Assembly (NCBI RefSeq): GCF_902652985.1
Contig: NC_047017.1
Coordinates: 22,444,001 to 22,508,000, forward strand
Source of the DNA: Pecten maximus
Taxonomy: Eukaryota
Length of the DNA stretch: 64,000 nt
Direction: 5' to 3'
Part shown: positions 14,820 through 64,000 of the stretch, in pieces
Numbering within the stretch: the first letter of the stretch is position 1
How the letters are laid out: each line of letters opens with the position of its first letter
Notes under the pieces: generated by a model
Databases searched by the model: none
What the model saw: the letters and a program-made list of their open reading frames with translations, nothing else
What the model was told of the DNA's origin: nothing
Position numbers and translations under genes: made by a program

Positions 14820-16800
14820 TCAATGTGGGAATCTTGGCCAGTTTGAACAAGAACACTTGATCAGGACCATATCGTGATAATTCCTAGCAGACTCTAGGTC
14901 TCAACTAAATATGATCAACTGGTGGAACACAATGGATACGTTTTTTAAATGTGATTTTCAAAACGGTGCCTATAGAGGCCATCTTGGATTTCGGAATGCC
15001 CTAAAATAATGTCAACATTTGCACAGGACCATGCGAGGCAGGTTCGAGCTTAATCCCACTTGTGCAACTTGAGAAGAAGAGTTAGAAATGTGTTTTTTTT
15101 TCAAGATTGTGGCACTGTTGGATTTTGGACCGACCCGAAAATAGAGAACACTTGCTCAGGATATCCCGGGGTCGTTTCGGGCAAGTTGAGAAGAAATTCG
15201 AAATGCATTTTTAGCTCGTCTCTTCGAAGAAGAGTGAGAGCTTATGTCGTCACTCCGGCGTCGGTGTCGGCGTCGGCGTTGGTTTTCCAAATGTTAAATT
15301 TTTGGTGCAAGTGTTGAAAGGCATAGTAATTTATGGTAATATGGTCCCTGTGGGGGTCAAACTACCCGCTGCCGGAGTTAAACTAAAAGATTTATTGGAA
15401 AAAAAACAGATTTTTGAAAATTTTTGGACTTAGAAAATTTTTGCGTTAAGTTTTTGGTGCAAGTGTTGAAAGGTATTAATACACCACTTCATAATTGTAC
15501 TAGGGTGCTGATAATTGGCAATAGAGTCCCTCTGGAGTTAGACTATCCCCTGCCAGAGTTAAACTAAAAGATTTTTTTGGGAAAAAAACAGAATTTTCAA
15601 ATTTTTAGACTTAGAATATTTCTGCGTTAAGTTTTTGGTGCAAGTGTTGAAAGGTATTAATACATCACTTTATAATTGTACTAGGGTGCTGATAGTTGGT
15701 AAAAGACTCCCTCTTGGGTTAACCTATCCCCTGCCGGAGTTAAACTAAAAAATGTTTTGGGGAAAAAAACAGAATTTTCAAATTTTTGGACTTAGAATAT
15801 TTCTGCGTTAAGTTTTTGGTGCAAGTGTTAAGAGATTTTAATACATCACTTTATAATTGTACTAGGGTGCTGATATTTGGCAATAGAAGTCCCTATGGAG
15901 TAAGGCAATCCCTTCCTTCAAGAAACTTTAGAAAAAAATTGGATTTTTTCTTTTTAAATCTGTTTTTTTGTTATTGTTTTTAAATCTTTGGACTTTGTGT
16001 TAAGTTTATATTGTGAGTGTTGAAAGGCATAGTAATACATGGTATTAGGTTCCCTAGCTGTGGGGGTTAAACTATCCCTTGCCGGAGTTAAACTGAAATA
16101 TTTTTTGGGGAAAAAACACATTTAAAAAAAAAAAGGTGCAAATGTTGAAAGCTATTTAACACATCACTTTATGATTGTACTAGGGTGCTGATATTTGATA
16201 AAAGAGTCCCTATGGAGTTACACTATCCCTTCTTGGGGTGAAACTGAAAATAAAACAATGTGAAAATGCTCACAATAGACAATTTATACCGATCGACATT
16301 TTTCAAGGGAGACAACTCTCATCAGGATAATATTTTGTCAAAAAATTGAAGAAATATGTCCAAAAGCAATTACATTTGTATTTAATATATTCATTTAATC
16401 TACAACAGCATAGCTTGTCTCCCGAATGTTTGTCAATAAATAATTTATATATATATAAATTCGTATGGTTTTGAAAATTGCATGAATTCACAAAGCATAA
16501 TCTGATCAAGTAAACAATATAAATATTATTATGCAATTTGCGAAACCATTCCAATTAATATATTTTAATTATGTATTGACAAACATTTGCGAGACGAGCT
16601 ATGCTGTTCTCCAACAGCTCTTGTTCAAGATGGTCATGATCATGATGGCCGACGCGGAAAATAACAACACTTGGTCAGGACCATCTCAGGATTATTACAA
16701 GTAAGTTTGAGCAGAATCGCAAAGGTGAAACCTGAGAGAAATGTTGAAATATGAAGGAAATATGGGCGGTGAACAGCACACGTCAACTGGGTCATCACTA
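14820..16800 (+). mobile_element. Old satellite-carrying element (CAAGATGG..GCCATCTTGGATTTCGG..ACACTTGGTCAGGACCAT family) interrupted by a nested HINE
   Basis: Degenerate units at 14820-15207 resume at 16625-16800. The same family recurs at ~32000-32940 and ~43990-44870. Confidence 0.6.
15208..16624 (+). mobile_element. Non-autonomous Helentron/HINE-like element (family B) with ~181-bp internal repeats
   Basis: TTTTTAGCTCGTCTC ... GAGACGAGCT subterminal inverted pair, (CGGCGT)n microsatellite at ~15256-15280, 3' hairpin GCTGTTCTCCAACAGC then TCTTGTT. TTTTTGGTGCAAGTGTT recurs at ~15300, 15451, 15632 and 15813. Inserted in a T run with no target-site duplication. Confidence 0.8.
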
Positions 16801-20200: not shown

Positions 20201-23200
20201 AAGGTGAGTGCGGCAGCCACTGTTGATTAACCATTGTTTGATGATGTGTAATAATATTATCAGTTTTCATATTAATAGTACGCAAATGGCATACCTATAG
20301 TAAGTTTTATATATAAAATGCAAATTACATGCACACAACTATAATTAAACATTGTCATAATATGTATAGATCTATGTGATTATTTATCATACAATGTTAA
20401 TAAAATGAAAATCAGATAATTATTCATTTAAAATGTTTACAGCTTAAAAAAGAAATGAGGATGATCAAGGTATATGGGATCTGAGTTGTGCAGTATTAAA
20501 ATAGTGTTAAAATTTGTTGTTGACAAGGTTTACATTTTGTATACATTGACATCAGTGAGTAATGATTGTGTATTTTCAGGAGGCAGTAACGTTCCTGGAC
20601 ACTCACACTCATGTCCAGTCAGATGGCATTGGTATCATAGCGACCTCTAAAGGGGCAGAGCTTGGTCAGTTCCTGGCAATCCACTGTCCTCTGGTAAGTT
20701 AAATTATCCACAGCATGATATGTTCTCTGGTTTGTTTGTTATACCCACCGTCCCTTGGTAAACTTGTTTGATTACCAACAGTCCTCTGGTAAACTTATTA
20801 TTGTAAATTTGGAAATTCATGCAAGGGGGAAATTTACACTTATTATGCATGCAGAGTCCTTTTGACCAGGAAAATTCCACCCAGACGTATTATTTGGATA
20901 TCAATTTGCATAATCTGAACTACAAATGGGTGGATCGATAAAAAAATTACCCCCAAGCATATAGTTAACATATTGAAATTGTGAAATTAACTCCCTGTGA
21001 AAATTACCATGTTTACAGTAATTTAGCCACAGTCCTCTGATAAACTTGTTAATTTACCCACAGTCATCTACAGTCACAATTAAATCAATTTATTGTGATT
21101 TTAAATCAAAGGTTGATCATGAATGACTGTTTTGCTTGTCATGTTTCTACACAACACATGTATCTAACTTAAGTGACAGTAAATATTTACAGGGAGAAAA
21201 TCATTGTTTCTTCTTTTAAAGATATGAAAATAAACATGATATATACAAACTGTATATAATGATGATGGGTTAGAAACCTCTTTCTATTGTTATTGTAGAT
21301 TTTTAAACCAAGAATCAGGGAATGAATCAGTTTGAAATGATCAATTGACTTATTGATATGAAAGTATATGCACAACAATAACACATCTACAACCTGTCTG
21401 CAAAAGCAATCTGATTAAGAAATACAGATCAACAATACACTGTAATGAAGGTCTTCATAACACAATGTATCAATATGTTTTTTAATCAGATTGTCTATAA
21501 AGAACTCCTGTTTCACTTCCTAATATAACAAAATACATTGTAAATGTACAAGTATATGAATCTTTATATAAAGATCACTTGCCACAAATGCCACTGCACT
21601 TCTTGAGTTGCTTATGATAAATACCTAAAATATTTTAACCCTCCCCCGTTAAATGGGAGTATACAGTAATATATTAGCATCTGCCAAACAATAGGATCAT
21701 TGGTCAGATCGAGTTAAATATCAAATATTACACTTGACTACTTTCAAAATAAAAAGCTCATTTACAAGATACCCCTGAGAAATTGATATTTTATTGATGA
21801 GGGGGTGGGGGTATATCTGTTAGCCCCAGGAGGGATTAATTTTATTGATAAGGGGGTGGGGGGTATATCTGTTAGCCCCTGGAGGGATTAATTTTATTGA
21901 TGAGGGGGGTGGGGGTATATCTGGTAGCCCCTGGAGGGATTAATTTTATTGATGAGGGGGTGGGGGTATATCTGTTAGCCCCTGGAGGGATTAATTTTAT
22001 TGATGAGGGGGTGGGGGTATATCTGTTAGCCCCAGGAGGGATTAATTTTATTGATGAGGGGGTGGGGGGTATATCTGTTAGCCCCTGGAGGGATTAATTT
22101 TATTGATGAGGGGGTGGGGGTATATCTGTTAGCCCCTGGAGGGATTAATTTTATTGATGAGGGGTGGGGGTATATCTGTTAGCCCCTGGAGAGATTAATT
22201 TTATTGATGAGGGGGTGGGGGTATATCTGTTAGCCCCTAGAGAGATTAATTTTATTGATGAGGGGGTGGGGGTATATCTGTTAGCCCCTAGAGAGATTAA
22301 TTTTATTGATGAGGGGGTGGGGGTAGTTCTGTTAGCACCTAGAGAGATTAATTTTATTGAAGAGGGATGGGGGTTTGTCTTGTATTTGTAAAGGATTTCA
22401 AACAAAGCAGTATGGATATTCTTAAAACTTTTACTTATGAAGTAATATGTGTTTTTGGTCACAGATAAATGTGTGGAATAATGACATTCAGGTATGATGG
22501 GTTTGCAATAATAATCTTTTGCCATTTAAAGATGCAACACTGGCATTGTGACAGAATTATATATATAAAGTGTATACATATGTATATGGTATGTATGGTC
22601 AATGTCCAGGAGAAACATCAACATGTGATATATAAAATGCCAATATATTTGTTTGTAGGTTAAAGCCATAGTCAGTATTAATGGTATGCCCTACTTATCA
22701 TTCTCTCCAATCCATGATGGATCGACTTCTTATCCAAATGCCATAGAGTAAGTACATGTATATCTAATCGTACAGAGAATGATTGGCTCTTAGTTTAAAT
22801 CTTAAGTATCCAGTGTCTTCATAACCAAATTGAATGATCTTCTATGTACACTAAAACATAAGACAAACAGGCTTGATACCAATTTCTGTTTTTTTCTGAC
22901 ATAGCTAAATTAAAATCTTTAAGTTTGGCTCACTATGTTTTATTTGGAATCCTATAAAAAGTTTCAGATATCAAACTATTACTTTTGGTCCAATATTTGG
23001 AATTCTGTTTTGTGAATGTATGATTTTACTTTATCCTCTGAATTGATGTCAGTTTCACCATGTAATTCCTGCCTATTGACCAATGTGGTATTTTAGGTTA
23101 GATCTTGCTCTATATGAGCTTTCTGAGGAAGGGATCATTGCCAAACCTGGCCACTGTTTCGACACTTCCAAGTTTTTCAAGGTATAGTGCTGTGTGTTTA

Positions 23201-25775
23201 CTGGTGTCTTTCTTATGTAGAATTTTGTTACTTAAAAATGATTGAACAATAGTTGCTTTGATTTATGAATTGTCTGTCCCTTGATCATTGTCTGTCCTAT
23301 GTCCATTGTATGTCCCATGTCCATTGTATGTCCCATATATGTCTCATATCTATTGTCTGTCCCTTGTCAAGTTGTTTGTTTTCCTTTAACAACTTCTCAA
23401 TTGCCAAGAGGCCTTGTTTCATTACATGACCTTAGAATTATGCTAGGATAAAGGACTCTCAATTTATTTAGTCAAAAGAAGAGACATAAATCCATTTTCA
23501 AAATCACAGGTACCAAATGTGTTTTAACATTCTGACCTAATAATAACCTTATAATATCAATTGCCATAGGCTCTGAATTGCTGAATAGAAGACTATTCCT
23601 GTCAATGCACTGCAAACCTCTTCATACTGAAATGAGGATTTTTTTGGTCCATGTATGTTTTTATCTATGTTTGTTTGCGGGTTTATCACCCTGTGAGCAT
23701 CCAGGGCCATTTTGATGTGGGGTCTCTTTGTAGTAGTTGGTGCCTACCACACTAAGGTCATCATCCATATTAGATATGGTAAAATGTCTTGCCTAAGGAT
23801 ACAACCACGACAGCATAGACCAGCCTGTTCCTCATGATCAGCTGCCAGAGAAACTCAATTCAACATAGATAGGGAGGTTCAAACCACACACCACTGATGT
23901 TTCTCCTGAGGTTTAGTGGCTGATATGTTCTAACCGACTAATATATCATCGTCCTCAAAGATTAAAATCTTCCAATAAATTCATAAAGATCCTACGATAA
24001 TGCAGTGCCCAGAAATTTGTAACAGATGAGCATTGCAGGCCCCTTATCCCATTTTGATATTTATCCAAACAATTACTTCAAATTTGTGTGATTCTCAATT
24101 TACAGGTTTGGGAATCTGATGTGAAAATTCTGAATATCTGTGGTGGTGATGATATGAATGTACACCCAGACCTACAGCAGTTACAAGTTAAATGCTTCCC
24201 TGCCCACAAACGAGACAACATAGAGCTGTTGGTATACCAGGGAGCTGGGCACCTAATAGATCCGCCCTTTTCTCCGCATTGTCGAGCCTCATTTAATAAA
24301 TTATTACGTGAGTACTATATATACATGACCATATCTATAAATACTTTTATAAGTCTAGAAGAATGTTGTTCTATACACTATAATCAACAACAGATGAAGT
24401 GTGTGCACACTCAACATATCTATAAAATAACATGTACAGAAACATTAACACAATACCCACAAAGCCCATACTGTTACATGTACCATATAAATGTATACTG
24501 CAGTGTAAAACATACCATATTATTAGCATCATCTGTTATATAGACCATGCCATATCATTAGCATCATCTGTTGTATAGACCACCCCATAACATTGGTACC
24601 ATGTCATATAGACCAGACAGTAACATGAGGACCATTTGTTATATAGACCATGCCTTAACATTAGCATTATCTTCCATATAGACCATGCCATAACATTAGC
24701 ACCATCTGTCATATAGACTATACTGTTACATTAGCACCATTTGTCATATAGACGATGCAGTTACTTTAGCACCATTTGTTATATAGACCAGACAGTAAAT
24801 TAGCACCATCTGTCATATAGACCAGACAGTAAAATTAGCACAGTCTGTCATATAGACCATATTGTAACATTAGTACCATGTCATATAGACCATATTGTAA
24901 CATTAGTACCATGTCATATAGACCATATTGTAACATTAGTACCATGTCATATAGACCATACTGTAACATTAGCACAATTTGTTACATAGACCATGCCATA
25001 ACATTAGCACCATTTGTTATATAGACCAGACAGTAACATTAGTACCATCTGTTATATAGACCAGACAGTCCCATTAGCACCATTTGTTATATAAACCAGA
25101 CAGTAACATTAGCACCGTCTGTCATATAGACCATACAGTAACATTAGCACCATCTGTTATATAGACCAGACAGTAACATTAGCACCATCTGTTATATAGA
25201 CCAGACAGTAACATTAGTACCATCTGTTATATAGACCAGACAGAACATTAGTACCATCTGTCATATAGACCAGACAGAACATTAATACCATCTGTTATAT
25301 AGACCATACTGTAACATTAACACCATTTTTCATATTGTAAAACCATGTTGGCATGCAGCACATTTTAAAACAATGAACTGAATTGTCCACATATATATAG
25401 TAATTCAGTCCCATATTGTTTTTTAATCAAAAGACTAATTGATGTGATAATTGTAAGAATATTAGTGGTACTTTAAAAACAAACATATGTGTTGATTAAA
25501 AGTACTTTCACTTGTTGATATTGTAACACCCTGTTTGTTATATCATTTACAAGTTCTATTACTTGTTTGCATTGAAGTTAGCTGTTCTATCGTTCAGAAA
25601 TTGCATTATCTGTTAAAATTCTGTTGATATTGTAGAGAACTGTTTGGTATGGGGAGGTAATCCTGTAGACCATGCCTACGCACAAGAAGACTCTTGGAGA
25701 CGCATTCTGACTTTCTTTAATAGACATTTACGTGAGGGACATGCCAGCAAAGATAGAATTAAAAGCCTACTGTAG
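17271..25775 (+). CDS. ACOT: Type-I acyl-CoA thioesterase / BAAT-family alpha/beta hydrolase, gene 2 (complete, 456 aa) with predicted mitochondrial leader
   Basis: Exons 17271-17335, 18555-18793, 19255-19521, 20034-20203, 20580-20693, 22659-22747, 23097-23181, 24106-24307 and 25636-25775 total 1371 nt and are open throughout. Motifs: [75 protein letters not shown]. Exon sizes 114/89/85/202 are identical to gene 1. The first exon is less certain than the rest. Confidence 0.92.
17797..17957. mobile_element. Palindromic non-autonomous element (MITE or Crypton-like) in intron 1 of gene 2
   Basis: AGAATATGCATGGTCAGTGTCTTAAAATATAAGTTGTA pairs with TACAGCTTATTTTTTAAGACACTGACCATAAATTCT; the inner arms TTTTGGC..AGAAAGACA / TGTCTTTCT..GCCAAAA also pair. 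Confidence 0.7.
18837..19073 (+). mobile_element. Full-length tRNA-derived SINE in intron 2 of gene 2
   Basis: Pol III A box TGGCCGAGTGG, B box GAGTTCGAAAC, central GGTTTTTCTCCGG..CTGGCTTTC..CCACC domain, and an (AAC)n plus poly(A) tail. Confidence 0.85.
20799..21020. mobile_element. MITE with TA-flanked degenerate terminal inverted repeats
   Basis: TATTGTAAATTTGGAAATT..GCAAGGGGG matches the reverse complement of CTCCCTGTGAAAATTACCATGTTTACAGTA. Confidence 0.6.
21788..22372. repeat. 51-bp G-rich minisatellite, ~11 copies (intron of gene 2)
   Basis: Unit TTTTATTGATGAGGGGGTGGGGGTATATCTGTTAGCCCCTGGAGGGATTAA. Confidence 0.95.
24510..25330. repeat. ~35-bp degenerate minisatellite, ~23 copies (last intron of gene 2)
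   Basis: Unit ACATTAGCACCATCTGTTATATAGACCAGACAGTA. About 5 homologous units also occur at 62547-62730. Confidence 0.9.
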
Positions 25776-26171
25776 CTAAAATAGGAAAGACATATATGCA
25801 TTTTGGAGTAAATCTGTTAATTTTTGTAATCCTGTGTAAGGAGATTTAGAGGAATTTTTCGAGTCAGATGTGTTACAACAGTTCAACAATAATTTTGAGA
25901 TAAACGGGTCCCACAATTATCATAATAGGAGATTGAATATTTGAAATAGTTTGAATTTCTCCGATAGAGAAATCTGATTTATGATTAATGAGAGTGCATG
26001 ATGAGATTGATAAGCATTGATTTTACTTTATTGAAGGTTACAACCGTGCATTCACATGTTCTTATCTGCATTTATTGCTTTTTTATGGATATTGTTGTTT
26101 GTTTTTTAGATATATTGTACTTGATTTGTTGATGTATTTTCTTAATATCATATTTTATTTTTTGAATCTAG

Positions 26172-26177
26172 AATAAA
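26172..26177 (+). terminator. Probable polyadenylation signal of gene 2
   Basis: AATAAA ~400 nt after the stop codon, preceded by U-rich sequence and followed by GU-rich TTTGTTAGTGGTGTTGTT. Confidence 0.55.
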
Positions 26178-26270
26178 TCATAACACCATAACACTCCTCT
26201 TGATTTGTTAGTGGTGTTGTTATGGTAACATCTAGATCGTTTTACAATTATATCACATTTTAGGCCCTAA

Positions 26271-26590
26271 GCATCACTGACGAGTCCTAAAAGGACAAAA
26301 CACTTGTATAGTGCAAGTATAACTTGTCTTTTGAAATCCTTTGATGTTCTTGCTTACCAATTGCTACTGGATTCCATCGCATTAGGCCCTAGGCATCACT
26401 GATGAGTCCTAGGACAAAAAAGCTGTATGATGTCCCTAGCATCACTGACGAGTCCTAGAAGGACAAAAAAGCTGAATGATGTCCCTAGCATCACTGACGA
26501 GTTCCAGAAGGATGACACAGCTATATGATGTCCCTAGCATCACTGACGAGTCCCAGAACGATGAAACAGCTGTATAACATCACTGACGAA
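26271..26590 (+). ncRNA. Tandem array of minimal type-I hammerhead ribozyme motifs (5 units plus a partial), individually mutated
   Basis: Consensus GCATCA-CTGA(C/T)GA-GTCC-TAGAA-GGAC-GAAA-C-AGCT-GTA-TGATG: stem I CATCA/TGATG, core CUGANGA and GAAA, stem II GUCC/GGAC, palindromic AGCU loop III, GUA cleavage triplet. Units start at 26271, 26393, 26439, 26488 and 26537. Confidence 0.78.
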
Positions 26591-27248
26591 TGGGAATTTT
26601 AAAACTAGTGAGAAAAAGTGAGGCATTTTAGTTTTTGTGAATTGTTTATTTATTACAGCAAACAACTCGTGGCGGACGGATATATATACTGTACAAGCAA
26701 ATATAAAATCCATACCGAAGTGTATCTTACAGTAGCAACAGTAGCAACGTAGAATGGTCCACAACACATGAGACATCATTTGTCAGCTTTTTTGTACATT
26801 GTTGTACATTAAAACTTCAAATAGGAAAACATTCATTTTTTGATATGGTGTGCTGCATTACAGTATCAAACCACAATTTAGTCACATACATTAACATATA
26901 CACTAGTCAGTTTAATGTGATTGTTAATCAGTTGAAATTCAAATTGACATTTTTTTTCAATATGATATATTCTCTTCTGCTTCAGACGAACATATGTATA
27001 TAACACATCAATCTAAGATAAACTAATATTTGCATAAATACTGAACAGTTATAGCAAGTTAAAATCATTTACAAATCTGACATGCGGAACGGTTCAAAAG
27101 CAGGTGTTAAAACGCAAGGACTGACAACACAGACGGAAAACAATTAATTAATTGATAATACAATGTAAAATTTACAAATAAAAAAAATAATAAAAACCCA
27201 AAAAACAAAGAAATATTACTGATGTCAGAAAATCATTTTGTAAATGCA

Positions 27249-29281
27249 ACAAGAGGCCCAAAGGGCCTTAACGGTCACCTGAGATTTGAAATATTTCAGC
27301 CAACTAAATTGACCCTTTTTGGCCCCACCCATCAGTCCTAATGGGGTCAGTCTATGAAGAGTATTTGATTCTAACATATAGTAGATAAGAAGATTTTTGA
27401 AATTTCAGTCAATTTGACCCTTTTTGGCCCCGCCCACCAGCCCCTGGGAGTCAACCGGGGCCAACATGTACATAACATCAAACTGTAATCCCATGCTGAT
27501 AATTTGAACCAAGTTAGAATGAATTCCAATACAAATCCAACAAATAATAGTCAAAAATGTGATTTCCCTATATAAACTATAGTAAAGTTTACCCCCTCCC
27601 CAGGGGCAAACGTGAGACCCCAGGGTCATGAAATTCACAATTTTGGTAAAGCACCTTAAGACCCTTCCATCTATGAAGAGTATTTGATTCTGCCATATAT
27701 CTGAGAGTAGGGAAGAAGATTTTTGAAATTTTAGTCAATTTGACCCTTTTTGGCCCCGCCCACCAGCCCCTGGGGGTCAACTAGGGCCAACATGTACATA
27801 CCATCAAAGTATCATCCCATGCTGATAATTTGATACAAGTTAGAATGAATTCCAATACAAATCCAACAAATAATAATCAAAAATGTGATTTCCCTATATA
27901 AACTATAGTAAAGTTTACCCCCTCCCCAGGGGCAAACGTGACCCCAGGGTCATGAAATTCACACTTTTGGTAAAGCACCTGAAGAGCCTTCCATCTATGA
28001 AGAGTATTTGATTCTAACATATCTGAGAGTAGAGAAGATTTTTGAAATTTCAGTCAATTTGACCCTTTTTGGCCCCGCCCACCAGCCCCTGGGGGTCAAC
28101 TAGGGCCAACATGTACATACCATCAAAGTATCATCCCATGCTGATAATTTGATACAAGTTAGAATGAATTCCAATACAAATCCAACAAATAATAATCAAA
28201 AATGTGATTTCCCTATATAAACTATAGTAAAGTTTACCCCCTCCCCAGGGGCAAACGTGAGACCCCAGGGTCATGAAATTCACACTTTTGGTAAAGCACC
28301 TGAAGAGCCTTCCATCTATGAAGAGTATTTGATTCTAACATATCTGAGAGTAGAGAAGATTTTTGAAATTTCAGTCAATTTGACCCTTTTTGGCCCCGCC
28401 CACCAGCCCCTGGGGGTCAATCAGGGCCAATATGTACATAACATCAAACTGTAATCCCATGCTGATAATTTGAACCAAGTTAGAATTAATTCCAATACAA
28501 ATCCAACAAATGATAGTCAAAAATGTGATTTCCCTATATAAACTATAGTAAAGTTTACCCCCTCCCCAGGGGCAAACGTGAGACCCCAGGGTCATGAAAT
28601 TCACAATTTTAGTAAAGCACCTTAAGACCCTTCCATCTATGAAGAGTATTTGATTCTACCATATCTGAGAGTAGAGAAGAAGATTTTTGAAATTTTAGTC
28701 AATTTGACCCTTTTTGGCCCCGCCCACCAGCCCCTGGGGGTCAATTAGGGCCAACATGTACATACCATCAAACTGTCATCCCATGCTGATAATTTGATAC
28801 AAGTTAGAATGAATTCCAATGCAAATCCAACAAATAATAGTCAAAAATGTGATTTCCCTATATAAACTATAGTAAAGTTTACCCCCTCCCCAGTGGCAAA
28901 CGTGAGACCCCAGGGTCATGCAATTCACAATTTTGGTAAAGCACCACAAGACCCTTTCATATATAAAGAGTGTTTGACTCCACCATATCTGAGAGTAAAG
29001 AAGAAGATTTTTGAAGTTTTAGTCAATTTGACCCTTTTTGGCCCCACCCCTCAGGCCCCTGGGGGGTGGGGACCATATAATTCACAATTTTGGTTGACCT
29101 TCAGCCATAGAAACTTTCTGCCAAATTTCATTGAATTTTGTTAAGTGGTTTTGGAGAAGAAGTCGAAAATGTAAAAAGTTTACCGACGGACGACGCACGA
29201 CGGACGACGGACGACGGACGACGACGGACAAAAGGCGATTAGAATAGGTCACTTGAGACTTCGTCTCAGGTGACCTAAAAA
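27249..29281 (-). mobile_element. Non-autonomous Helentron/HINE-like element (family A), young copy with ~5 full internal ~322-bp repeats
   Basis: Inverted copy of 608-1845: ACAAGAGGCCCAAAGGGCCTTAACGGTCACCTGAG ... CTCAGGTGACCTAAAAA, with a (GAC/GGAC)n microsatellite at 29185-29230. AGTCAATTTGACCC recurs at ~27407, 27733, 28052, 28372, 28697 and 29021. Confidence 0.85.
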
Positions 29282-34353: not shown

Positions 34354-37300
34354 TCAACATTTCGTGAGGATTGCTGCCATCTTGGCCATAGTTGCGGTGT
34401 TTAGATCACATTCATACAAGCCGCTCTCACTACTGAAAGCCATGTCGACGATAGCACCAAGCTGTCTGAATTCCTTGCCAGTGACACGAAGACTCGTGGG
34501 TGTCAATGATGAGAGATTTTCCTTATTGGTATGGTGGAGCACCAGCACTGTTACATCACTGCCGACTGAGGAAAAGAACCGATTGTAATTAAACAGTTAA
34601 AACAAATTGAAATACATATAAAATACAATACAAATGACATAAGTAACACTCCATTAAGTAATACAAATGAATGTCATAATTCACATCGACTCTTAGGGGT
34701 CCTGAGTTTGATTCCTATAGAAAGCTTATACGAAATAACGACATCTGTTGCATGAACTTAAGATGGAAACGGATTCGTATATGACTGGTGGACAATCTGT
34801 TGCTGAGAGTGAATATTAAATATTTATTTCATCGTTAAAACAAAAACAAAAAATACCTTCATTTGACTATGAATAATGTATGAACTTTGAATAATCGCTA
34901 TTCATCGTTCTGCCATGGTTCTTCAACTTCCGTGTCTCCATGACTCCAATTGCACAACACCAGTTTTTCAAAGTAGTTTTATCATGTATCCTCTAGATAA
35001 TAAATGTTTTGAGAATGTCATTTTTGTTGCTATTACATGTAATTAACTTCTGTTACATAAACTAACCAGTAGTATATAGCTTTACCTTCGATTCCCAATA
35101 GTGCGTCCTGTATGTTTGTTCCAACTCTTGACATGTTCAAACATAACACGACTAGAGGACCTTTCGGAGTGTCGGATCCCTTATGATATAGCTTGACAGC
35201 AAGACTGAACTTTGTCATGTCAATCATCAGCTCTAAACGTTTGGACATTTCTTTCGTCACCATATCAAGCATTGTCTTTCCAATAGAATTACCATACCGT
35301 ATTCCTAAAACTGTAACATAATGTTTATATGGGACAAGTATAATTATGTTTAAGACGAAAGAGTATTTAACATAAAGTTAGGTCCCTCTTTAAACATTGT
35401 AAATATGATTATGCAACGATGACACTCAGAGGTATCAAGTATTTGAGAAACAAAACATATTCAATAGTTTATCAAAGAAGGAAATTAATAATATTATTCT
35501 TTCAAAGCGAAGTCAAATTTGTCATAGTTTGAAGGCTCTATCGTTAATTACCAATTTTGTTAGAGAATAGATATATTTGCAAGACGGGCTAAGTTGTCGT
35601 TTACTCGTATAAAATATCGGAGACAATGGCAATGCATATGACTAATTTCAAAATATTGTAGTGTATATATCATTAACATACCTATATCTTTCTTTTTTGG
35701 TTTTCGTAATTCTAGTATCTCCTCTTTCATATGTTGGATTTCCTCTTCTTTTTCGCCTACGGAAAACAGACACGGGTACAAACAAAAATAATCAAATACA
35801 GTTTCCTGAACTAGTTTCATAACCGAATCAAACTTCAACGGTACAGTTGTTCATGTAAGGGAGTTCCTTTAATGACGTGAAGATGTTTTCTGTAATCATA
35901 TAAATTATTACACTATTATTATCAATAAATTGCCATCACTGAGCAAAACCTTATGTTAATAGTTCTTAAAATTAAAAATCAGTTAAATCAAAGAAAAACA
36001 GCGTTCGAGCAAAAACTGTTGAACGTAACATATCAATAACATTTTAGCTTACAAATATTGTGGTTCAACTCCTCAATGTTGCATGACAGAGAATTGAGAT
36101 CTTTTCTGGATTCAGTTTGCAATCGATCTAAATTCTCTTGTAGTGTTTCATTCTCTTCTTCCAGTGCGTGAACCCTAAACGTCAAACGTTCCTTTTCTTT
36201 CTCATTTTCCTCAAGATCTGACGTCATTTTTGCCTTTTCCCTTTTAAGTGTCTCAACATTTCCTGTCATTCGTTTCTTTTCTTTTTCAAGATCTGACATC
36301 AGATTTGTTTTTTCTCTATGAAGTGTCTCAATATTTCTTGTCAAACTTTCCTTTTCCTCCTCGTTTTTCTCCAGATCTGACTCCAGTTTTTCTTTTTCTT
36401 TTTCTAGTGACTGAACAGTTTTTGTCAAATCTTCATTTTCCTCACTGTATTTCTCCAGATCTGACATCAGTTTTGTTTTTTCTCTTTGAAGTGTCTCAAC
36501 GTTTCTTGTCAAATGTTCCTTTTCTTCCTCGTGTTTTTTCAACTGTGACGCAAGTTTTGATTTTTCTTTTTCTAGTGACTCAACAGTTTTTGTCAAACCT
36601 TCATTTTCATTACCGTATTTCTCCAGATCTGACATCAGTTTTGTTTTTTCTCTTTGAAGTGTCTCAACATTTCTTGTCAAAGCTTCATTTTCCTCACTGT
36701 ATTTCCCCAGCTCTGACGCCAGTTTTGTTTTTTCTCTTTGAAGTGTCTCACCGTTTTTTGTCAAATGTTCCTTTTCTTCCTCGTTTTTTTCCAGGTCTGA
36801 AACCAGTTTTGTATGTTCTTTTTCAAGTGTCTCAACGTTTCTTTTCAAACTTTCCTTTTCTTCCTTGTTTTTCTCCCGATCTGACTCCAGTTTTGTTTTG
36901 TTTTTTTCTAGTGACTGAACAGTTTTTGTCAAAGCTTCATTTTCCTCACTGTATTTCTCCAGATCTGACATCAGTTTTGTTTTTTCTCTTTGAAGTGTCT
37001 CACCGTTTCTTGTCAAATGTTCCTTTTCTTCCTCATTTTTTTCCAAATCTGAAGCCAGTTTAGTTTTTTCTTCTTCTAGTCTCTTAACGGTTCCTGTCAA
37101 ACTCTCATTTTCTTCCTCGTTTTTTTCCAGGTCTGAAACCAGTTTTGTTTTTTCTTTTTCAAGTGACTCAATAGATTTGGTTAAATCTTTATTTTCTTCA
37201 CTGTATTTCTCCAGATTTGACTCCAGTTTTGATTTTTCTTTTTCTAGTGACTCAACAGTTTTTGTCAAACCTTCATTTTCCTCACTGTATTTCTCCAGAT

Positions 37301-40300
37301 CTGACATCAGTTTTGTTTTTTCTCTTTGAAGTGTCTCACCGTTTCTTGTCAAATGTTCCTTTTCTTCCTCGTTTTTTTCCAAATCTGAAGCCAGTTTTGT
37401 TTTTTCTTCTTCTAGTCTCTTAACGGTTCCTGTCAAACTCTCATTTTCTTCCTCGTTTTTTTCCAGGTCTGAAACCAGTTGTGTTTTTTCTTTTTCAAGT
37501 GACTCAATAGATTTGGTTAAATCTTCATTTTCTTCACTGTATTTCTCCAGATTTGACTCCAGTTTTCTTTTCTTTTTTTCTAGTGACTCAACAGTTTTTG
37601 TCAAAGCTTCATTTTCCTCACTGTATTTCCCCAGCTCTGACGCCAGTTTTGTTTTTTCTCTTTGAAGTGTCTCACCGTTTTTTGTCAAATGTTCCTTTTC
37701 TTCCTCGTTTTTTTCCAGGTCTGAAACCAGTTTTGTATGTTCTTTTTCAAGTGTCTCAACGTTTCTTTTCAAACTTTCCATTTCTTCCTTGTTTTTCTCC
37801 CGATCTGACTCCAGTTTTGTTTTGTTTTTTTCTAGTGACTGAACAGTTTTTGATAAACCTTTTTTTTCTTCATCGTATTTGTCCAGGTCTGATCTCAGGT
37901 TCATATTTTTGTCTTTCAGACTCTTTGTGTCCTTCTCCAGGGTTTTTATTTGTCTATCTTTTTTATCTGCAAAGGAAACATTATGCCTATTTAGAAAACA
38001 TATACGTAACAGGAATCATACATAGTAAACAAGCCCGCCTGAACGACCAGTTGTCTTTCTGCAACAATTTATAATAAACGATTAAGGTGAAAATCGCAAG
38101 GTCGTTGTATTGTTAAGAAAAATAGTTCTGCTTCTGTGCTGATAATAATTACAACGGAGTTATCAAAACTAAGCTGCAAAAGTATACGTATGTAACAACA
38201 GACCACTTCAGAGCGGGGTAGGTACATGTTTCAATGATGTTTTGATATTCATAATCAATACGCAGGTAAATTATTGCTAGCAGTATCTTTCAAATAAATG
38301 GATAAACAACTTGTTTTATTTTTATAATGATGCTAGTTCCAGATATGGCTCTGGATTTTTTGAATGGAAATAGAAGTTTGCTATTGGATTTGCTAATATT
38401 AGGCAATGTGTAGGTGAAATACACAAATAGTATGTCCCTGTAAATATGCAAGGTAACCTGGGGTCCATTACGGATACAGTACATATTTTCAATTGAATCC
38501 TACATAACAACGGTTTTCAGTTTTGTTAAATACCCAATGCAGTACCTCACCAGCAAAACCTGTTTGGAAGTCAGTAGAGTGTCTGCGGTCAAAAACGACT
38601 TTACAATACGATTCACTGAGAGCGTCGTCTCAGTAACCCTTGGCATACAAGGTCAGGTGTGATTACCGTAGTCGCTTCGTAAGAAGCCCTGGGTTTACAG
38701 GTAAAATAAATCTGAACGGATATTTTATTTCAGAAGTGTGGTCATGAACCTTAATGTTGACTTTGAATGACTATACATAATAAAATAATAAAACAATTCT
38801 CAGATTAATGCATTAATGAATGCTCCCTTTCATATACGTCCCGATATACGTATGCGTATACGTAAGCGGCTTAATTTTGAAAACTTTATTGTAAATATCC
38901 CTCATATAAATTTTTTACCAGTTCGGTTGACATTAATTTATTGTACACAGTGATTTTCTTTTAACTGCACTGATTTTTTGTTTTTGTTTTTGTTTTTTTC
39001 TTTTCTCTTTTTTTTTTACAGACTTTCTTATTATTCAAATCAGATACGTTCATAGGGTTAACTGCTGTCCTATTACAGCGCGCAACAAAATATCCCCTGT
39101 GTAGGCACAATCCACTAATTTAATGTGCTTTCAACTAAGGTCTAAACGATTTAACAACTGGTGTTTCTCTTCGAATTCAGAGAATAATAAAACTGATTAG
39201 TATCAAATGTCATCCTACAAGTCTTTATCCTACGGACATAATAAAAACAAATATAAAATCTAGTTTCGAAATGTACACTGTAAAAAATAATATGATATCA
39301 AACTAAAGCCTTGGAACTGTTGATACTGGTTTTCACACTTGAAATATATTAATTAGTTTTATATGAACTTTTGAGTGCCATCGTTATCATTTTGATATAT
39401 TACAAATTTTGTTCACATTTACAATGTATATTTTAGTATTTGTCAGGGAAACATCTCTTGTAATGATGATTATATATTAATTCATGATTAACATTGGAAT
39501 GTAATGGGAATAGCAAAGGCTTTATTCGTGAATTAATGAATCTATTCAACTTTTACCTATAATGAATTTTGGTTGTTTCTTATTGGTGTGATCCTCATAA
39601 TTTTAATCAAAATTGACTTCAATTTTTGAAGACGTTCGGGTAAAATAGGATATGTGTTTTGTTAGATACCTTAAAAGCTTGCCCAGCTGTCTTTCTAGGA
39701 CAACCACGTGACTAAGAGAAATGGCTTGTCAATAACTGTAACGATCGCTGCTATCACGTGGTAGAGAATATAAAAATGTGCATAATATATATTGAATTCA
39801 AAATTTGGAATAATCTTCTCCTTACACAGAATTTTATCATAATTTATTTATTTTACAAAATATCTAAAAAATATGCCACTTTAATATCAATCAATACGCT
39901 GGGTAAAATATCACATATCTTACCAAGAGTGTTATACAAATCTCTGTTCTTGGACTCCAAATCTGTCAAATTCATATTTGACGTCGTTTTATTTTCTTTT
40001 AATTTACCGACCTTTTGCTCGAGTCGTTCACATTCTTCTTTCAACGAGCGTACCTCGTCATTTTTCGAATCTGTTAATACAGGAATATTTCCATGACACT
40101 CCATTGTTATTTACTCTGGCACATCATTTATATATATATATATATATACCATTAAAAACAGGGAAATTTAATGAGTTTCAATCCATCATTGGATGTGACA
40201 TTATATACCAAGAATGTGCCAATGTTGGTGTAAATGTGAAAAGAAATCAGGAATATCACTGACTTCAATGGGTGATATCAGTGGATCAATCTAAGTGAAC

Positions 40301-62546: not shown

Positions 62547-63415
62547 GACAATACCGTTACATTAACACCATTTGTTATAGACACCATACTGTTACATTAA
62601 CACCTTATGTCCTATAGACTAGACAGTGACATTAGCACAAACAGTCATATAGACCATACTGTAACATTAGTACCATCTTTCAAATAGACCATGCCATAAC
62701 GTTAGCACCATCTGTCATAAACCATGCTGGCATGCAGCACAATTAAATACAATAACCTTCGGTGTCTTCATATATGTAAAAGCAAACCTTTATTTGTTGA
62801 TATTAGTTTTATTACTTGCTTGCCTTGGGTTAAATGATATGCCGTTCAAGAAAATGGTATTGTCTGTTAAACTATCTATATCTGGTGAGAACTGTTTGGT
62901 ACGGAAAGGAAATCCTGTAGACCATGCTTACTCACAATAACATTCTGAATTTCTTTCGTAAACCTATAAAAAAATACATGAGGGACGTATAAGATTGAAT
63001 TAAAAATGGCTATATCCAAAATAGGAAAAACATATGTTCATTTTTGTGTCAATCTGATCTTATTTAATTCGTATCTGGTAGCAGCACTTGTATGCTGCGA
63101 ATTCATTTTTGCTCTACTCTATCTTGTTTTCCACTTATTTTGAAAAGTGCTGATATCTAGTGTGTCTTCTTTACAATCCTATGATATGTCTTACTTTCAT
63201 AAAGCTACTGCATTCAAAATCATTTGGCCCTTTACTGACGAGTCTTAGGAGGATGAAAAGCTGTATGATGTCCCTAGCATTACTGACTAGTCCCATAAGG
63301 ATGAAACAGCTGTATGATGTCCATATGATTTCGGACGAGTCCTAGAAGGAGTAAACACCAGTAGGATAACCTTAGTATTTCAGACGAACCATAGAAGGAC
63401 GAAATAACTGTATAA
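62547..63415 (+). pseudogene. Decayed genomic copy of the 3' end of ACOT gene 2 (intron minisatellite, last exon, 3' UTR, hammerhead array)
   Basis: GAGAACTGTTTGGTACGGAAAGGAAATCCTGTAGACCATGCTTACTCACAATAA (62887-62940) matches 25635-25688, with the acceptor TAG changed to GTG, GAA changed to TAA, and deletions after it. Flanks are collinear with ~25150-25830 and ~26320-26580. Confidence 0.88.
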
Positions 63416-63416
63416 T
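63231..63416 (+). ncRNA. Second, diverged hammerhead-motif array (4 units)
   Basis: CTGACGAGTCTTAGGAGGATGAAAAGCTGTATGATG; GCATTACTGACTAGTCCCATAAGGATGAAACAGCTGTATGATG; the last unit retains GGACGAAA. Confidence 0.65.
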
Positions 63417-64000
63417 GTTTAATTCTGTATTGCAACTGGTAGATGTTATTTCGAACACCATACGGAATACATCTGGATGTCAGAAAGTTCAATTATCACC
63501 ACGGTAAGGATTTCATTCTACAGTTACACTAATTTTAATGCTGGGCTTACTGTCATCAAGTGAGTATTTTATAAAAAATAACTATATATGTGTAGAAGTG
63601 CAACAAATAAACCTGTGTTCTACACCTGTCATGGCGCATCATTTGAATTTGAACCGAAAAGTCGACAGATTCTAATGCATTTCTTATCATCATAAGAATT
63701 CATGTTATATATGTAGGTATAGTGATGATTTTTGAAGGATAAAGTTAAAAATCGCGGACTGGGGCAGTAATGATACGTGACGAAATCTAATTAGTATTCT
63801 CTTCTGAAGAAGATGTTACAAGTAGAATATTGCTATTGCACTTATATAGTACAACCGTACTGTAGCTTTTGCAAAAAAAAAAAAAAAAAAAAAAACTTCA
63901 AAGAAGTCGGCTGATCAAATATTTATGTTGGGTTATTTTCTTTGTCATTATATTTTGCCTTAAAAGAAGCAGCAGAGTTAATTTGTAGGATATCAAAGTG
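63415..64000 (+). repeat. Recent direct duplication, copy 2
   Basis: Matches 59293-59882; identity begins at ATGTTTAATTCTGTATTGCAAC. Confidence 0.95.

What the first reader, a model, noticed from the sequence alone, without database searches (positions are those of the whole stretch)
26260..26590. Tandem minimal hammerhead-ribozyme array in sense orientation ~95 nt downstream of a gene's poly(A) signal
Seen: five units (period 49 bp for units 3-5; unit 2 is 46 bp; unit 1 lies 122 bp upstream of unit 2) share a consensus that is a complete hammerhead. It has stem I CAUCA/UGAUG, CUGA(C/U)GA, stem II GUCC-UAGAA-GGAC, GAAA, a 2-bp stem III closed by palindromic AGCU, and a GUA cleavage site. Known: minimal type-I hammerheads with palindromic loop III typify Penelope-like retroelement repeats and retrozymes and are thought to cleave as dimers. 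No Penelope RT or GIY-YIG ORF is visible here. Inference: amplified as a minisatellite right after AATAAA (26172) on the transcribed strand, the array could act as a co-transcriptional self-cleaving terminator for gene 2. It could equally be a dead retroelement remnant.
Basis: partly seen in the sequence, partly recalled or inferred. Interest (0 to 1): 0.88.

Follow-up and report, generated by a model that had tools for sequence, protein, structure and literature searches.

The report
Decayed hammerhead-ribozyme repeat beside a scallop gene
The tandem hammerhead motifs just after this king-scallop gene are a worn-out copy of a mobile repeat with about 18,500 hammerhead units in the genome; every unit here has lost something the ribozyme needs, and transcripts run across it, so it is an ordinary dead repeat and not a ribozyme terminator.

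Summary
The array is real. Five hammerhead-derived units lie on the + strand at 26266-26590, starting 89 nt after the AATAAA (26172-26177) of a spliced, expressed acyl-CoA thioesterase/BAAT-like gene.

It is one decayed copy of a very abundant family in the Pecten maximus genome. About 18,500 units match the core within 3 mismatches, against 0 for the reversed control. The 49-nt family consensus is a canonical metazoan type-I hammerhead. Intact copies elsewhere pass Rfam RF00163 (35-37 bits, cut-off 34). The window's best score on that model is 23.9 bits.

No unit here is intact:
- u1-u3 have G12>A, a CpG decay that is also the commonest change family-wide.
- u3 has also lost the GUA cleavage site.
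- u4 has A14>C.
- u5 has lost its helix I 3' strand and has a defective helix II.

A second, equally dead array (63226-63418) sits at the paralogous position of a local duplication, about 73% identical, which is the same as neighbouring non-coding DNA. RNA contigs break at about 26203, the poly(A) site. Thin read-through is equally deep before and after the array, and in one run a contig runs from the spliced exon into the array.

The terminator idea is not supported. This scan has already found the same family at other places in this genome.

The parts
25636..25775 (+). Coding part of the last exon of gene 2 (acyl-CoA thioesterase/BAAT-like). The splice acceptor is at 25636 and the stop codon at 25773-25775.
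   Evidence: RNA contigs of four runs begin at 25636, with loose ends that match the previous exon. Translation and tblastn. Pfam on upstream exons.
26172..26177 (+). AATAAA poly(A) signal of gene 2. The likely cleavage site is about 26203.
   Evidence: Sequence. The X8 contig 25750-26203 (depth 53) ends at 26203, and the contigs that follow have depth 3.6-3.8.
26266..26314 (+). Unit 1, a hammerhead relic. G12>A; loop III AGCU>ACUU; helix I has one mismatch.
   Evidence: Rfam Hammerhead_1 gives 23.9 bits against a cut-off of 34.
26315..26386 (+). Spacer. It is an internally deleted remnant of the non-ribozyme 'right arm' of the parent repeat.
   Evidence: It is colinear with 63163-63225 of the paralogue. 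The paralogue's longer version, 63099-63179, matches the right flanks of arrays elsewhere (BLAST E 1.9e-6; alignment).
26387..26433 (+). Unit 2, a relic. G12>A; C15.2>A; 3-nt deletion in loop II; +1 nt in loop I.
26434..26482 (+). Unit 3, a relic. G12>A; C15.2>A; U16.1>A, so the cleavage triplet GUA has become GAA.
   Evidence: The Rfam Hammerhead_3 composite 26420-26474 scores 26.7 bits against a cut-off of 48.5.
26483..26531 (+). Unit 4, a relic. A14>C; G16.2>A; helix II is GUUC/GGAU.
26532..26574 (+). Unit 5. The core nucleotides are intact, but helix II is GUCC/CGAU (G10.1-U wobble plus a C-C mismatch), and the helix I 3' strand has been removed by a 9-nt deletion.
   Evidence: The fold of 26532-90 has z -0.13. 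The u4/u5 composite 26518-72 forms helices I and III but not helix II, z -0.95.
26575..26589 (+). Truncated sixth unit (loop I remnant, helix I 5' strand, CUGACGA). This is the right end of the repeat-derived stretch.
   Evidence: Sequence. Homology of the right flank to a paralogue at C3:22524714 starts at 26606 and does not include the array.
63051..63225 (+). Paralogous copy: a badly decayed hammerhead relic followed by the about 130-nt right arm of the parent repeat.
   Evidence: Alignment with array right flanks from six other loci. BLAST E 1.9e-6.
63226..63418 (+). Paralogous array of four dead units. uA lacks the helix I 5' strand. uB has G8>U. uC has U4>G and G12>U. uD has U4>A.
   Evidence: It is colinear with 26325-26577 at 73% identity.

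Best explanation
The stretch 26266-26589 is a decayed, non-functional insertion of a small ORF-less mobile repeat of Pecten maximus that carries hammerhead ribozymes. This is the metazoan non-LTR 'retrozyme' or hammerhead-satellite kind. The parent element has a left arm (about 170 nt), a 49-nt type-I hammerhead, and a right arm or spacer (about 150 nt) that can be followed by further hammerheads. In many copies the 49-nt ribozyme module has been amplified at the DNA level into a minisatellite.

In live copies the ribozyme presumably cuts multimeric transcripts into units. Helix III is only 2 bp and is capped by the palindrome AGCU. Two neighbouring units can therefore pair ACAGCUGU with ACAGCUGU and act as a double hammerhead, with loop CCCUA closing helix I between units.

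The copy here landed downstream of an ancestral acyl-CoA thioesterase gene before a local duplication. It has since decayed neutrally, largely by CpG transitions, in both paralogues. It is carried passively on low-level read-through or neighbouring transcripts. It does not form the gene's 3' end, which is made at the ordinary poly(A) site at about 26203.

Shown: family membership, the inactivating changes, the paralogy, and the positions of the RNA contigs. Inferred: the retrozyme-type life cycle, the order of events, and the lack of cleavage, which was not assayed.
For: (1) Family. The exact 37-nt motif with G12 has 581 matches in the genome and the reversed control has 0. The 25-nt core with up to 3 mismatches has 9,459 + 9,085 matches against 0. 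Spacings are multiples of 49.

(2) Intact copies pass Rfam RF00163 at 35-37 bits (cut-off 34). The window reaches 23.9 bits and has no hit at gathering thresholds.

(3) Every one of the 9 window units has a disabling change. G12>A, seen in u1-u3, is also the commonest change family-wide (56 of 186 unique units), and it sits in a CpG.

(4) The u4/u5 composite, the only one with all core nucleotides, does not form helix II and has z -0.95.

(5) Paralogy. 25552-25816 matches 62805-63056 at 70% and 26325-26577 matches 63163-63415 at 73%. The array has therefore diverged about as fast as the neighbouring exon relic and non-coding DNA.

(6) The arms of the parent element are shared among loci. The paralogue keeps the right arm.

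(7) RNA. Contigs of 4 runs are spliced at 25636. In X8 a contig ends at 26203 and depth falls from 53 to 3.6-3.8 before the array and 3.4 after it. In X1 one contig spans 25636-26468. The bin 26405-26471 reaches depth 232 to 10,908 from other family copies.

(8) The architecture (helix I 6 bp, helix II 4 bp, helix III 1-2 bp with a palindromic loop, tandem repeats, low GC, no ORF) matches published descriptions of canonical metazoan type-I hammerheads and retrozymes, mussel included (PMC4209133, PMC7229834).
Against: Cleavage was not assayed, and an unforeseen trans or dimer arrangement among mutated units cannot be formally excluded. Core positions differ from the family consensus less often (9 of 99) than stems (44 of 198) or other positions (19 of 144). 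This could hint at constraint, but part of the non-core differences (A6>G, C11.1>U) are subfamily variants also present in intact arrays. The parent element's left arm was not detectable in the window (nhmmer E>10). The RNA evidence is from assembled contigs only, so it gives no strand, no true ends and no local depth. The retrozyme life cycle (circRNA, reverse transcription) is taken from the literature and is not shown for this family.
Confidence: 0.9

Rival explanations
1. The array is a functional co-transcriptional self-cleaving element. Nascent RNA that reads past the poly(A) site is cut by the hammerheads, perhaps as dimers between neighbouring units, and this promotes Pol II termination for gene 2.
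For: The array is in sense orientation, 89 nt after AATAAA. The u4/u5 composite keeps all 11 core nucleotides and helices I and III. Core positions are somewhat less changed than the rest. A paralogous array is retained at the equivalent position.
Against: - Four of five units have lethal core changes and the fifth lacks helix I. The best composite lacks a stable helix II and the conserved G10.1-C11.1 pair.
- The paralogous array is wholly dead and lies after an exon relic with a premature stop.
- In X8, depth is the same before and after the array (3.8 and 3.4), and the drop is at 26203. In X1 a contig runs from the exon into the array, and contigs continue to 27249.
- The sister gene 1 has no array downstream.
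- Chance proximity is expected for a family of about 18,500 units.
- From general knowledge, not tested here: hammerhead cleavage leaves a 5'-OH, which is a poor substrate for the XRN2 torpedo.
Confidence: 0.03
2. The array is the remnant of a flanking repeat (pLTR) of an autonomous Penelope-like element whose RT/GIY-YIG ORF has been deleted.
For: PLE ORFs of 700-930 aa with GIY-YIG are abundant in this genome. Their flanking repeats carry minimal hammerheads of similar design, for example L033 1520 and 5160 with GUCCC/GGGAC and a palindromic ACGU. A 2026 preprint argues that animal retrozymes derive from PLE pLTRs (10.64898/2026.07.22.740005).
Against: None of the 12 sampled full-length PLE loci has a hammerhead of this family within their roughly 10-kb stretches. 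The PLE hammerheads differ in sequence, with A at N7 and loops ACGU, GCGC or GUAC. Four arrays with 10-kb stretches show no RT ORF. The window has no RT or GIY-YIG ORF. The arms shared among family copies are short and non-coding.
Confidence: 0.06
3. The resemblance is due to chance, and the minisatellite has no hammerhead ancestry.
For: No Rfam hit at gathering thresholds in the window.
Against: The units are 84-92% identical to a 49-nt family consensus whose intact copies pass RF00163. Shuffled and reversed controls give 0 matches.
Confidence: 0.01

Closest known systems
Metazoan non-LTR retrozymes / type-I hammerhead tandem repeats (newt satellite 2, Schistosoma Sm-alpha, coral, mussel and axolotl repeats; Cervera & de la Pena 2020, PMC7229834)
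   Same: It has a canonical type-I hammerhead: helix I 6 bp, helix II 4 bp, helix III 2 bp with a palindromic tetraloop. It forms head-to-tail repeats, has low GC and no ORF, is dispersed in thousands of copies, and is present in RNA libraries. The same genome also holds autonomous PLEs.
   Different: Published monomers are 150-450 bp (350-390 bp in mussel). In this family the 49-nt ribozyme module alone is amplified into minisatellites, and the window copy has a 122-bp (deleted) plus 46-49-bp spacing. Circular RNA and self-cleavage have not been shown for this family. The copy in the window is dead.
Minimal hammerheads of Penelope-like elements (Cervera & de la Pena 2014, PMC4209133)
   Same: Short helix III with a palindromic sequence, implying action as a dimer. 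Massive copy number, with most copies away from full elements.
   Different: PLE min-HHRs typically have a longer helix II, a shorter helix I and a bulged base after A9, and they lie in the pLTRs that flank an RT/GIY-YIG ORF. Here the hammerhead is the canonical 6/4-bp type, and no PLE ORF adjoins it in the window or in 12 sampled PLE loci.
Self-cleaving elements proposed to act at mRNA 3' ends (discontinuous hammerhead in mammalian Clec2 3' UTRs; beta-globin CoTC element). Cited from general knowledge.
   Same: Position in or just after a 3' UTR on the transcribed strand.
   Different: Those elements are conserved at orthologous loci and were shown to cleave. Here the catalytic nucleotides are mutated, the paralogue has decayed, and RNA contigs run through the array.

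Membership tests
Hammerhead ribozyme, type I (Rfam RF00163) | Score at or above the curated gathering cut-off (34 bits) | tested here: not met
   The window's best score is 23.9 bits at 26271-26314, with nothing at gathering thresholds. As a positive control, 17 intact family copies in L004, L013 and L014 score 35-37 bits.
Hammerhead ribozyme, type I (Rfam RF00163) | Core strand C3-U4-G5-A6-N7-G8-A9 | tested here: met
   CUGACGA or CUGAUGA is present in all five units of 26266-26589. It is mutated in three of the four paralogous units.
Hammerhead ribozyme, type I (Rfam RF00163) | Core strand G12-A13-A14 plus the A15.1-U16.1 pair and an NUH cleavage site | tested here: not met
   G12>A in u1-u3, A14>C in u4 and U16.1>A in u3. 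Only u5 keeps all of them.
Hammerhead ribozyme, type I (Rfam RF00163) | Three helices around the core (I, II, III) | tested here: not met
   u5, the only unit with an intact core, lacks the helix I 3' strand and has GUCC/CGAU for helix II. The MFE of the u4/u5 composite does not form helix II.
Metazoan non-LTR retrozyme (PMC7229834) | Type-I hammerhead within short head-to-tail repeats, low GC, no ORF, many dispersed copies | tested here: met
   GC is about 0.35.
Metazoan non-LTR retrozyme (PMC7229834) | Monomer of about 150-450 bp that contains non-ribozyme sequence | tested here: inconclusive
   The parent element has arms of about 170 and about 150 nt, and L041 shows two hammerheads about 195 nt apart. 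Most of the family mass, however, is a 49-bp ribozyme-only minisatellite, and the window spacer is cut down to 72 nt.
Metazoan non-LTR retrozyme (PMC7229834) | Expressed and self-processed into linear and circular monomer RNAs | not testable with these tools
   Only assembled contigs were available. Short contigs of other family copies are abundant in RNA runs (depth 232 to 10,908 in bin 26405-26471), which shows transcription but not processing or circles.
Penelope-like element flanking repeat (pLTR) | Direct repeats flanking an ORF with RT and GIY-YIG domains | tested here: not met
   No such ORF in the window. There is no family hammerhead in the roughly 10-kb stretches around 12 PLE ORFs. 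Those PLEs carry different min-HHRs.
Ribozyme-type co-transcriptional terminator | RNA ends or a loss of downstream transcript at the element | tested here: not met
   Contig depth falls at 26203, not at the array, and is 3.8 before and 3.4 after it in X8. The X1 contig 25636-26468 enters the array. This is contig-level evidence only.

The most novel reading that the evidence does not exclude
The u4/u5 composite hammerhead (26518-26572, predicted cut after A26525) keeps every catalytic nucleotide and helices I and III. It might retain weak self-cleavage, perhaps helped by pairing of the AGCU palindromes of neighbouring units. If so, it could trim the minority of gene-2 transcripts that read through the poly(A) site, which would be an exapted retrozyme relic acting as a fail-safe 3'-end processing site.
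Probability: 0.03. Interest if true: 0.6.

Novelty: new member of a known kind. Interest (0 to 1): 0.15.

Why it matters
It matters little as a locus. It is a dead copy of a repeat, and its position after a poly(A) signal is what chance predicts for so abundant a family. The result removes an attractive but unsupported 'ribozyme terminator' reading.

The family behind it has some interest for ribozyme and transposon specialists. It is a canonical type-I hammerhead whose 49-nt module alone is amplified into minisatellites, with about 18,500 units in the king scallop. That is shorter than the 150-450-bp monomers described for animal retrozymes. I found no paper on hammerheads in scallops. This scan had already noted the family at several other places in the same genome.

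Tried and rejected
- Rfam at gathering thresholds over the whole window gave no hit.
- A hammerhead descriptor scan of the window found only the two arrays and one unrelated CTGATGAG...GAAA match at 16274-16325(-), which I did not pursue.
- A profile of the parent element's left arm (7 loci, 170 positions) searched with nhmmer --max against the window gave nothing at 26000-26265 (best E 0.9, elsewhere). My by-eye similarity of 26190-26265 to that arm, and the idea that the AATAAA derives from the element, are therefore dropped.
- Covariation within the family: the family is young and shows mostly single changes. The only clear double change is U-A to C-G at pair 9/46, in 8 units. Structural support therefore rests on the Rfam score and the literature, not on covariation.
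- PLE adjacency was sampled at 12 full-length PLE loci and 4 arrays and was negative. It was not an exhaustive search.
- Read laying returned only Logan contigs. It gave no strand, no molecule ends and no poly(A) tails, so 3' ends are inferred from contig breaks.
- An enrichment test of arrays after AATAAA genome-wide was considered and not run. The parent element's own left arm contains A/T-rich hexamers, which would confound it.
- Literature searches for hammerhead plus scallop, and for hammerhead plus satellite DNA plus bivalve, returned nothing relevant.

Full report
**Organism and setting.** The window is G000:C3:22444001-22508000 of an assembly of 918,306,378 bases in 3,983 contigs. That total, the scaffold count and the scaffold lengths 60,076,705, 44,824,366 and 32,483,354 equal those published for the king scallop Pecten maximus, assembly xPecMax1.1 (PMC7191990).

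**Observation.**
- The + strand at 26266-26589 holds five units plus a truncated sixth.
- TRF reports a 49-bp period x3.9 at 26387-26575.
- The unit start occurs 5 times in the window against 0 in 100 shuffles.
- The fifth of those matches belongs to a second array of four units at 63226-63418 (+).
- AATAAA is at 26172-26177.

**The gene upstream.** It is real and lies on the + strand.
- ORF fragments hit Pfam Bile_Hydr_Trans (2.6e-15) and BAAT_C (1.3e-12).
- The last exon ends with a stop at 25773-25775.
- RNA contigs of four runs from four studies start exactly at 25636, with overhangs that match the previous exon. This shows splicing and expression.

**What the units are.** The exact motif CATCACTGACGAGTCC-N4-8-GGAYGAAACAGCTGTA occurs 581 times in the genome and 0 times for the reversed control. 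The 25-nt core with up to 3 mismatches occurs 18,544 times against 0. Copies are spaced at multiples of 49 bp and form arrays of up to several kb.

The 49-nt consensus CCCTAACATCACTGACGAGTCCTAGAAGGACGAAACAGCTGTATGATGT reads as follows:
- loop I: CCCUA
- helix I: ACAUCA/UGAUGU (6 bp)
- core strand: CUGACGA
- helix II: GUCC-UAGAA-GGAC (4 bp)
- GAAA
- helix III: A-U and C-G, capped by the palindrome AGCU
- cleavage site: GUA

This is the 'canonical metazoan type-I' architecture described in PMC4209133, which is thought to act as a dimer through the palindrome. Intact copies elsewhere pass Rfam RF00163 (35-37 bits, cut-off 34; 17 hits in three loci). As a family, this is a bona fide hammerhead.

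**State of the window copy.** Rfam finds nothing at gathering thresholds. In E-value mode the best scores are Hammerhead_1 at 23.9 bits and Hammerhead_3 (a composite of neighbouring units) at 26.7 and 23.4 bits, all far below the cut-offs. Aligned to the family consensus, the units show these changes:

| Unit | Changes |
|---|---|
| u1 | G12>A |
| u2 | G12>A, C15.2>A, 3-nt deletion in loop II |
| u3 | G12>A, C15.2>A, U16.1>A (no cleavage triplet) |
| u4 | A14>C, G16.2>A, helix II mismatch |
| u5 | core intact; helix II is GUCC/CGAU; a 9-nt deletion removed the helix I 3' strand |

In a tandem array the site after unit n-1 uses the core of unit n. I therefore also checked the composites.
- u2/u3 fails because of G12A.
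- u3/u4 fails because of GAA at the cleavage site and A14C.
- u4/u5 (26518-26572) keeps all core nucleotides and helices I and III. Its MFE, however, does not form helix II, it lacks the conserved G10.1-C11.1 pair, and it folds no better than shuffles (z -0.95).

The array's own majority consensus has A at G12.

**Decay pattern.** G12>A and C11.1>U are the two halves of a CpG. G12>A is also the commonest change in 186 unique units sampled from 17 other loci, where it is seen in 56. The window copy carries the family's ordinary mutational wear.

**Paralogy.** Three blocks are colinear:
- 24520-25399 with 62530-62778 (an intronic minisatellite)
- 25552-25816 with 62805-63056 (the last exon, 70% identity)
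- 26325-26577 with 63163-63415 (spacer plus array, 73% identity)

The repeat was therefore already downstream of the ancestral exon before a local duplication. It has since diverged about as much as the neighbouring DNA. The second copy's exon relic has a premature stop, and all four of its units are dead through different mutations: G8>U; U4>G with G12>U; U4>A; and loss of the helix I 5' strand. The older paralogue, gene 1 (BAAT_C exon 7472-7678, last exon 10437-10559), has no array downstream.

**Parent element.** Arrays in other loci share about 170 nt upstream (7 loci) and about 150 nt downstream. L041 has two hammerheads about 195 nt apart.
- The paralogue keeps a decayed hammerhead (63051-63098) and the right arm (63099-63225; BLAST E 1.9e-6 to two loci; alignment) before its array.
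- The 72-nt 'spacer' between u1 and u2 is an internally deleted version of that arm.
- The left arm is not detectable in the window (nhmmer).

So the '122-bp monomer' is a truncated retrozyme-like monomer, and units 2-5 are an expansion of the ribozyme module. This agrees with what earlier agents of this scan reported for other copies. I verified the arms only on my own sample.

**Relation to Penelope-like elements.** GIY-YIG matches inside open frames of 700-930 aa are numerous. In 12 such loci no hammerhead of this family lies within the roughly 10-kb stretches fetched. Several of them carry other minimal hammerheads in their flanking repeats, with palindromic ACGU, GCGC or GUAC (for example L033 at 1520 and 5160 around ORF 2658-5033). 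This is as described for PLEs (PMC4209133). Four arrays with 10-kb stretches have no RT ORF. The window has none either. The family is thus of the non-autonomous, retrozyme-like kind that co-exists with PLEs (PMC7229834). A 2026 preprint derives such elements from PLE pLTRs.

**Transcripts (contigs only, no strand).**
- In X8 a contig covering 25750-26203 (depth 53) ends at 26203, about 26 nt after the AATAAA. The following contigs, 26187-26301 and 26272-26404, have depth 3.6-3.8, and 26596-26834 has depth 3.4. The drop is therefore at the poly(A) site, with no further drop across the array.
- In X1 a single contig runs from the spliced exon start (25636) through the poly(A) signal to 26468 inside unit 3. 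Another contig covers 26529-27249.
- In X3 and X9 a contig at 26593-27277 is about as deep as the gene's exon (29 against 21, and 7.9 against 13.4). The downstream region may therefore belong to a separate transcript. It also has its own paralogue at C3:22524714, which lacks the array.
- Very high depth in the bin 26405-26471 comes from short contigs of other family copies, which shows that the family is transcribed.

Nothing here indicates cleavage or termination at the array.

**Chance proximity.** The genome has about 18,500 units, and roughly 50 separate loci with a perfectly intact motif lie in the first ~214 Mb listed. Decayed loci such as the two in this window come on top of that. There are 67,741 annotated genes in 918 Mb (PMC7191990). 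Some copies within about 100 nt downstream of a poly(A) signal, in sense orientation, are therefore expected without selection. This is an estimate, not a test.

**Verdict.** The 'dead retroelement remnant' alternative is right, and the terminator hypothesis is unsupported. In kind it is known. The scallop family itself appears undescribed in the searchable literature and is notable only for its 49-nt ribozyme-only minisatellite form.

Noticed in passing
window 24510-25335; also 7666-9440 and 62530-62778: A 35-bp-period minisatellite sits in the last intron of gene 2, right after the BAAT_C exon. Paralogous versions occur in gene 1 and in the partial duplicate. The intron minisatellite is therefore older than the gene duplications.
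   Followed up: partly
window 62805-63056: This is a relic of the last ACOT exon in the partial duplicate. GNPVDHAYSQ is followed by a stop, and about 11 nt are missing relative to gene 2, so it is probably a pseudo-exon. No BAAT_C exon was found upstream of it.
   Followed up: partly
window 26593-27277: This stretch is covered by RNA contigs in all four runs, at depths comparable to the gene-2 exon in two of them. It has a 67%-identical paralogue at G000:C3:22524714-22525305 (L050 1501-2092) without any hammerhead array. The strand and the gene it belongs to are unknown. The minus-strand ORF 26540-26779 has no Pfam hit.
   Followed up: partly
window 27250-29065 (inverted copies at 775-1845): A tandem repeat of about 320-bp units. 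RNA contig depth is in the thousands (up to about 43,000 in X1), so the repeat is very highly represented in transcriptome assemblies.
   Followed up: no
window 26179-26194: An 8-bp direct duplication (CATAACAC x2) lies just after the AATAAA. The contigs of runs X1 and X8 lack one copy, so this is an indel polymorphism next to the poly(A) signal.
   Followed up: no
L033 1520, 5160 (+) and 1355 (-); L032 4941 and 1192; L031 3481: Full-length Penelope-like elements of this genome carry other minimal hammerheads in their flanking repeats, with palindromic ACGU, GCGC or GUAC in place of helix III. In L033 they bracket the 792-aa ORF as direct repeats, with one further inverted copy.
   Followed up: partly
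window 21772-22384: A tandem repeat of about 51 bp, 92-95% identical between copies, which gives long artefactual ORFs on both strands.
   Followed up: no
window 36033-37904 (-): A 623-aa open frame made of coiled coil (Pfam CENP-F_leu_zip, KASH_CCD and others). The region has strongly skewed base composition (AT skew -0.45).
   Followed up: no
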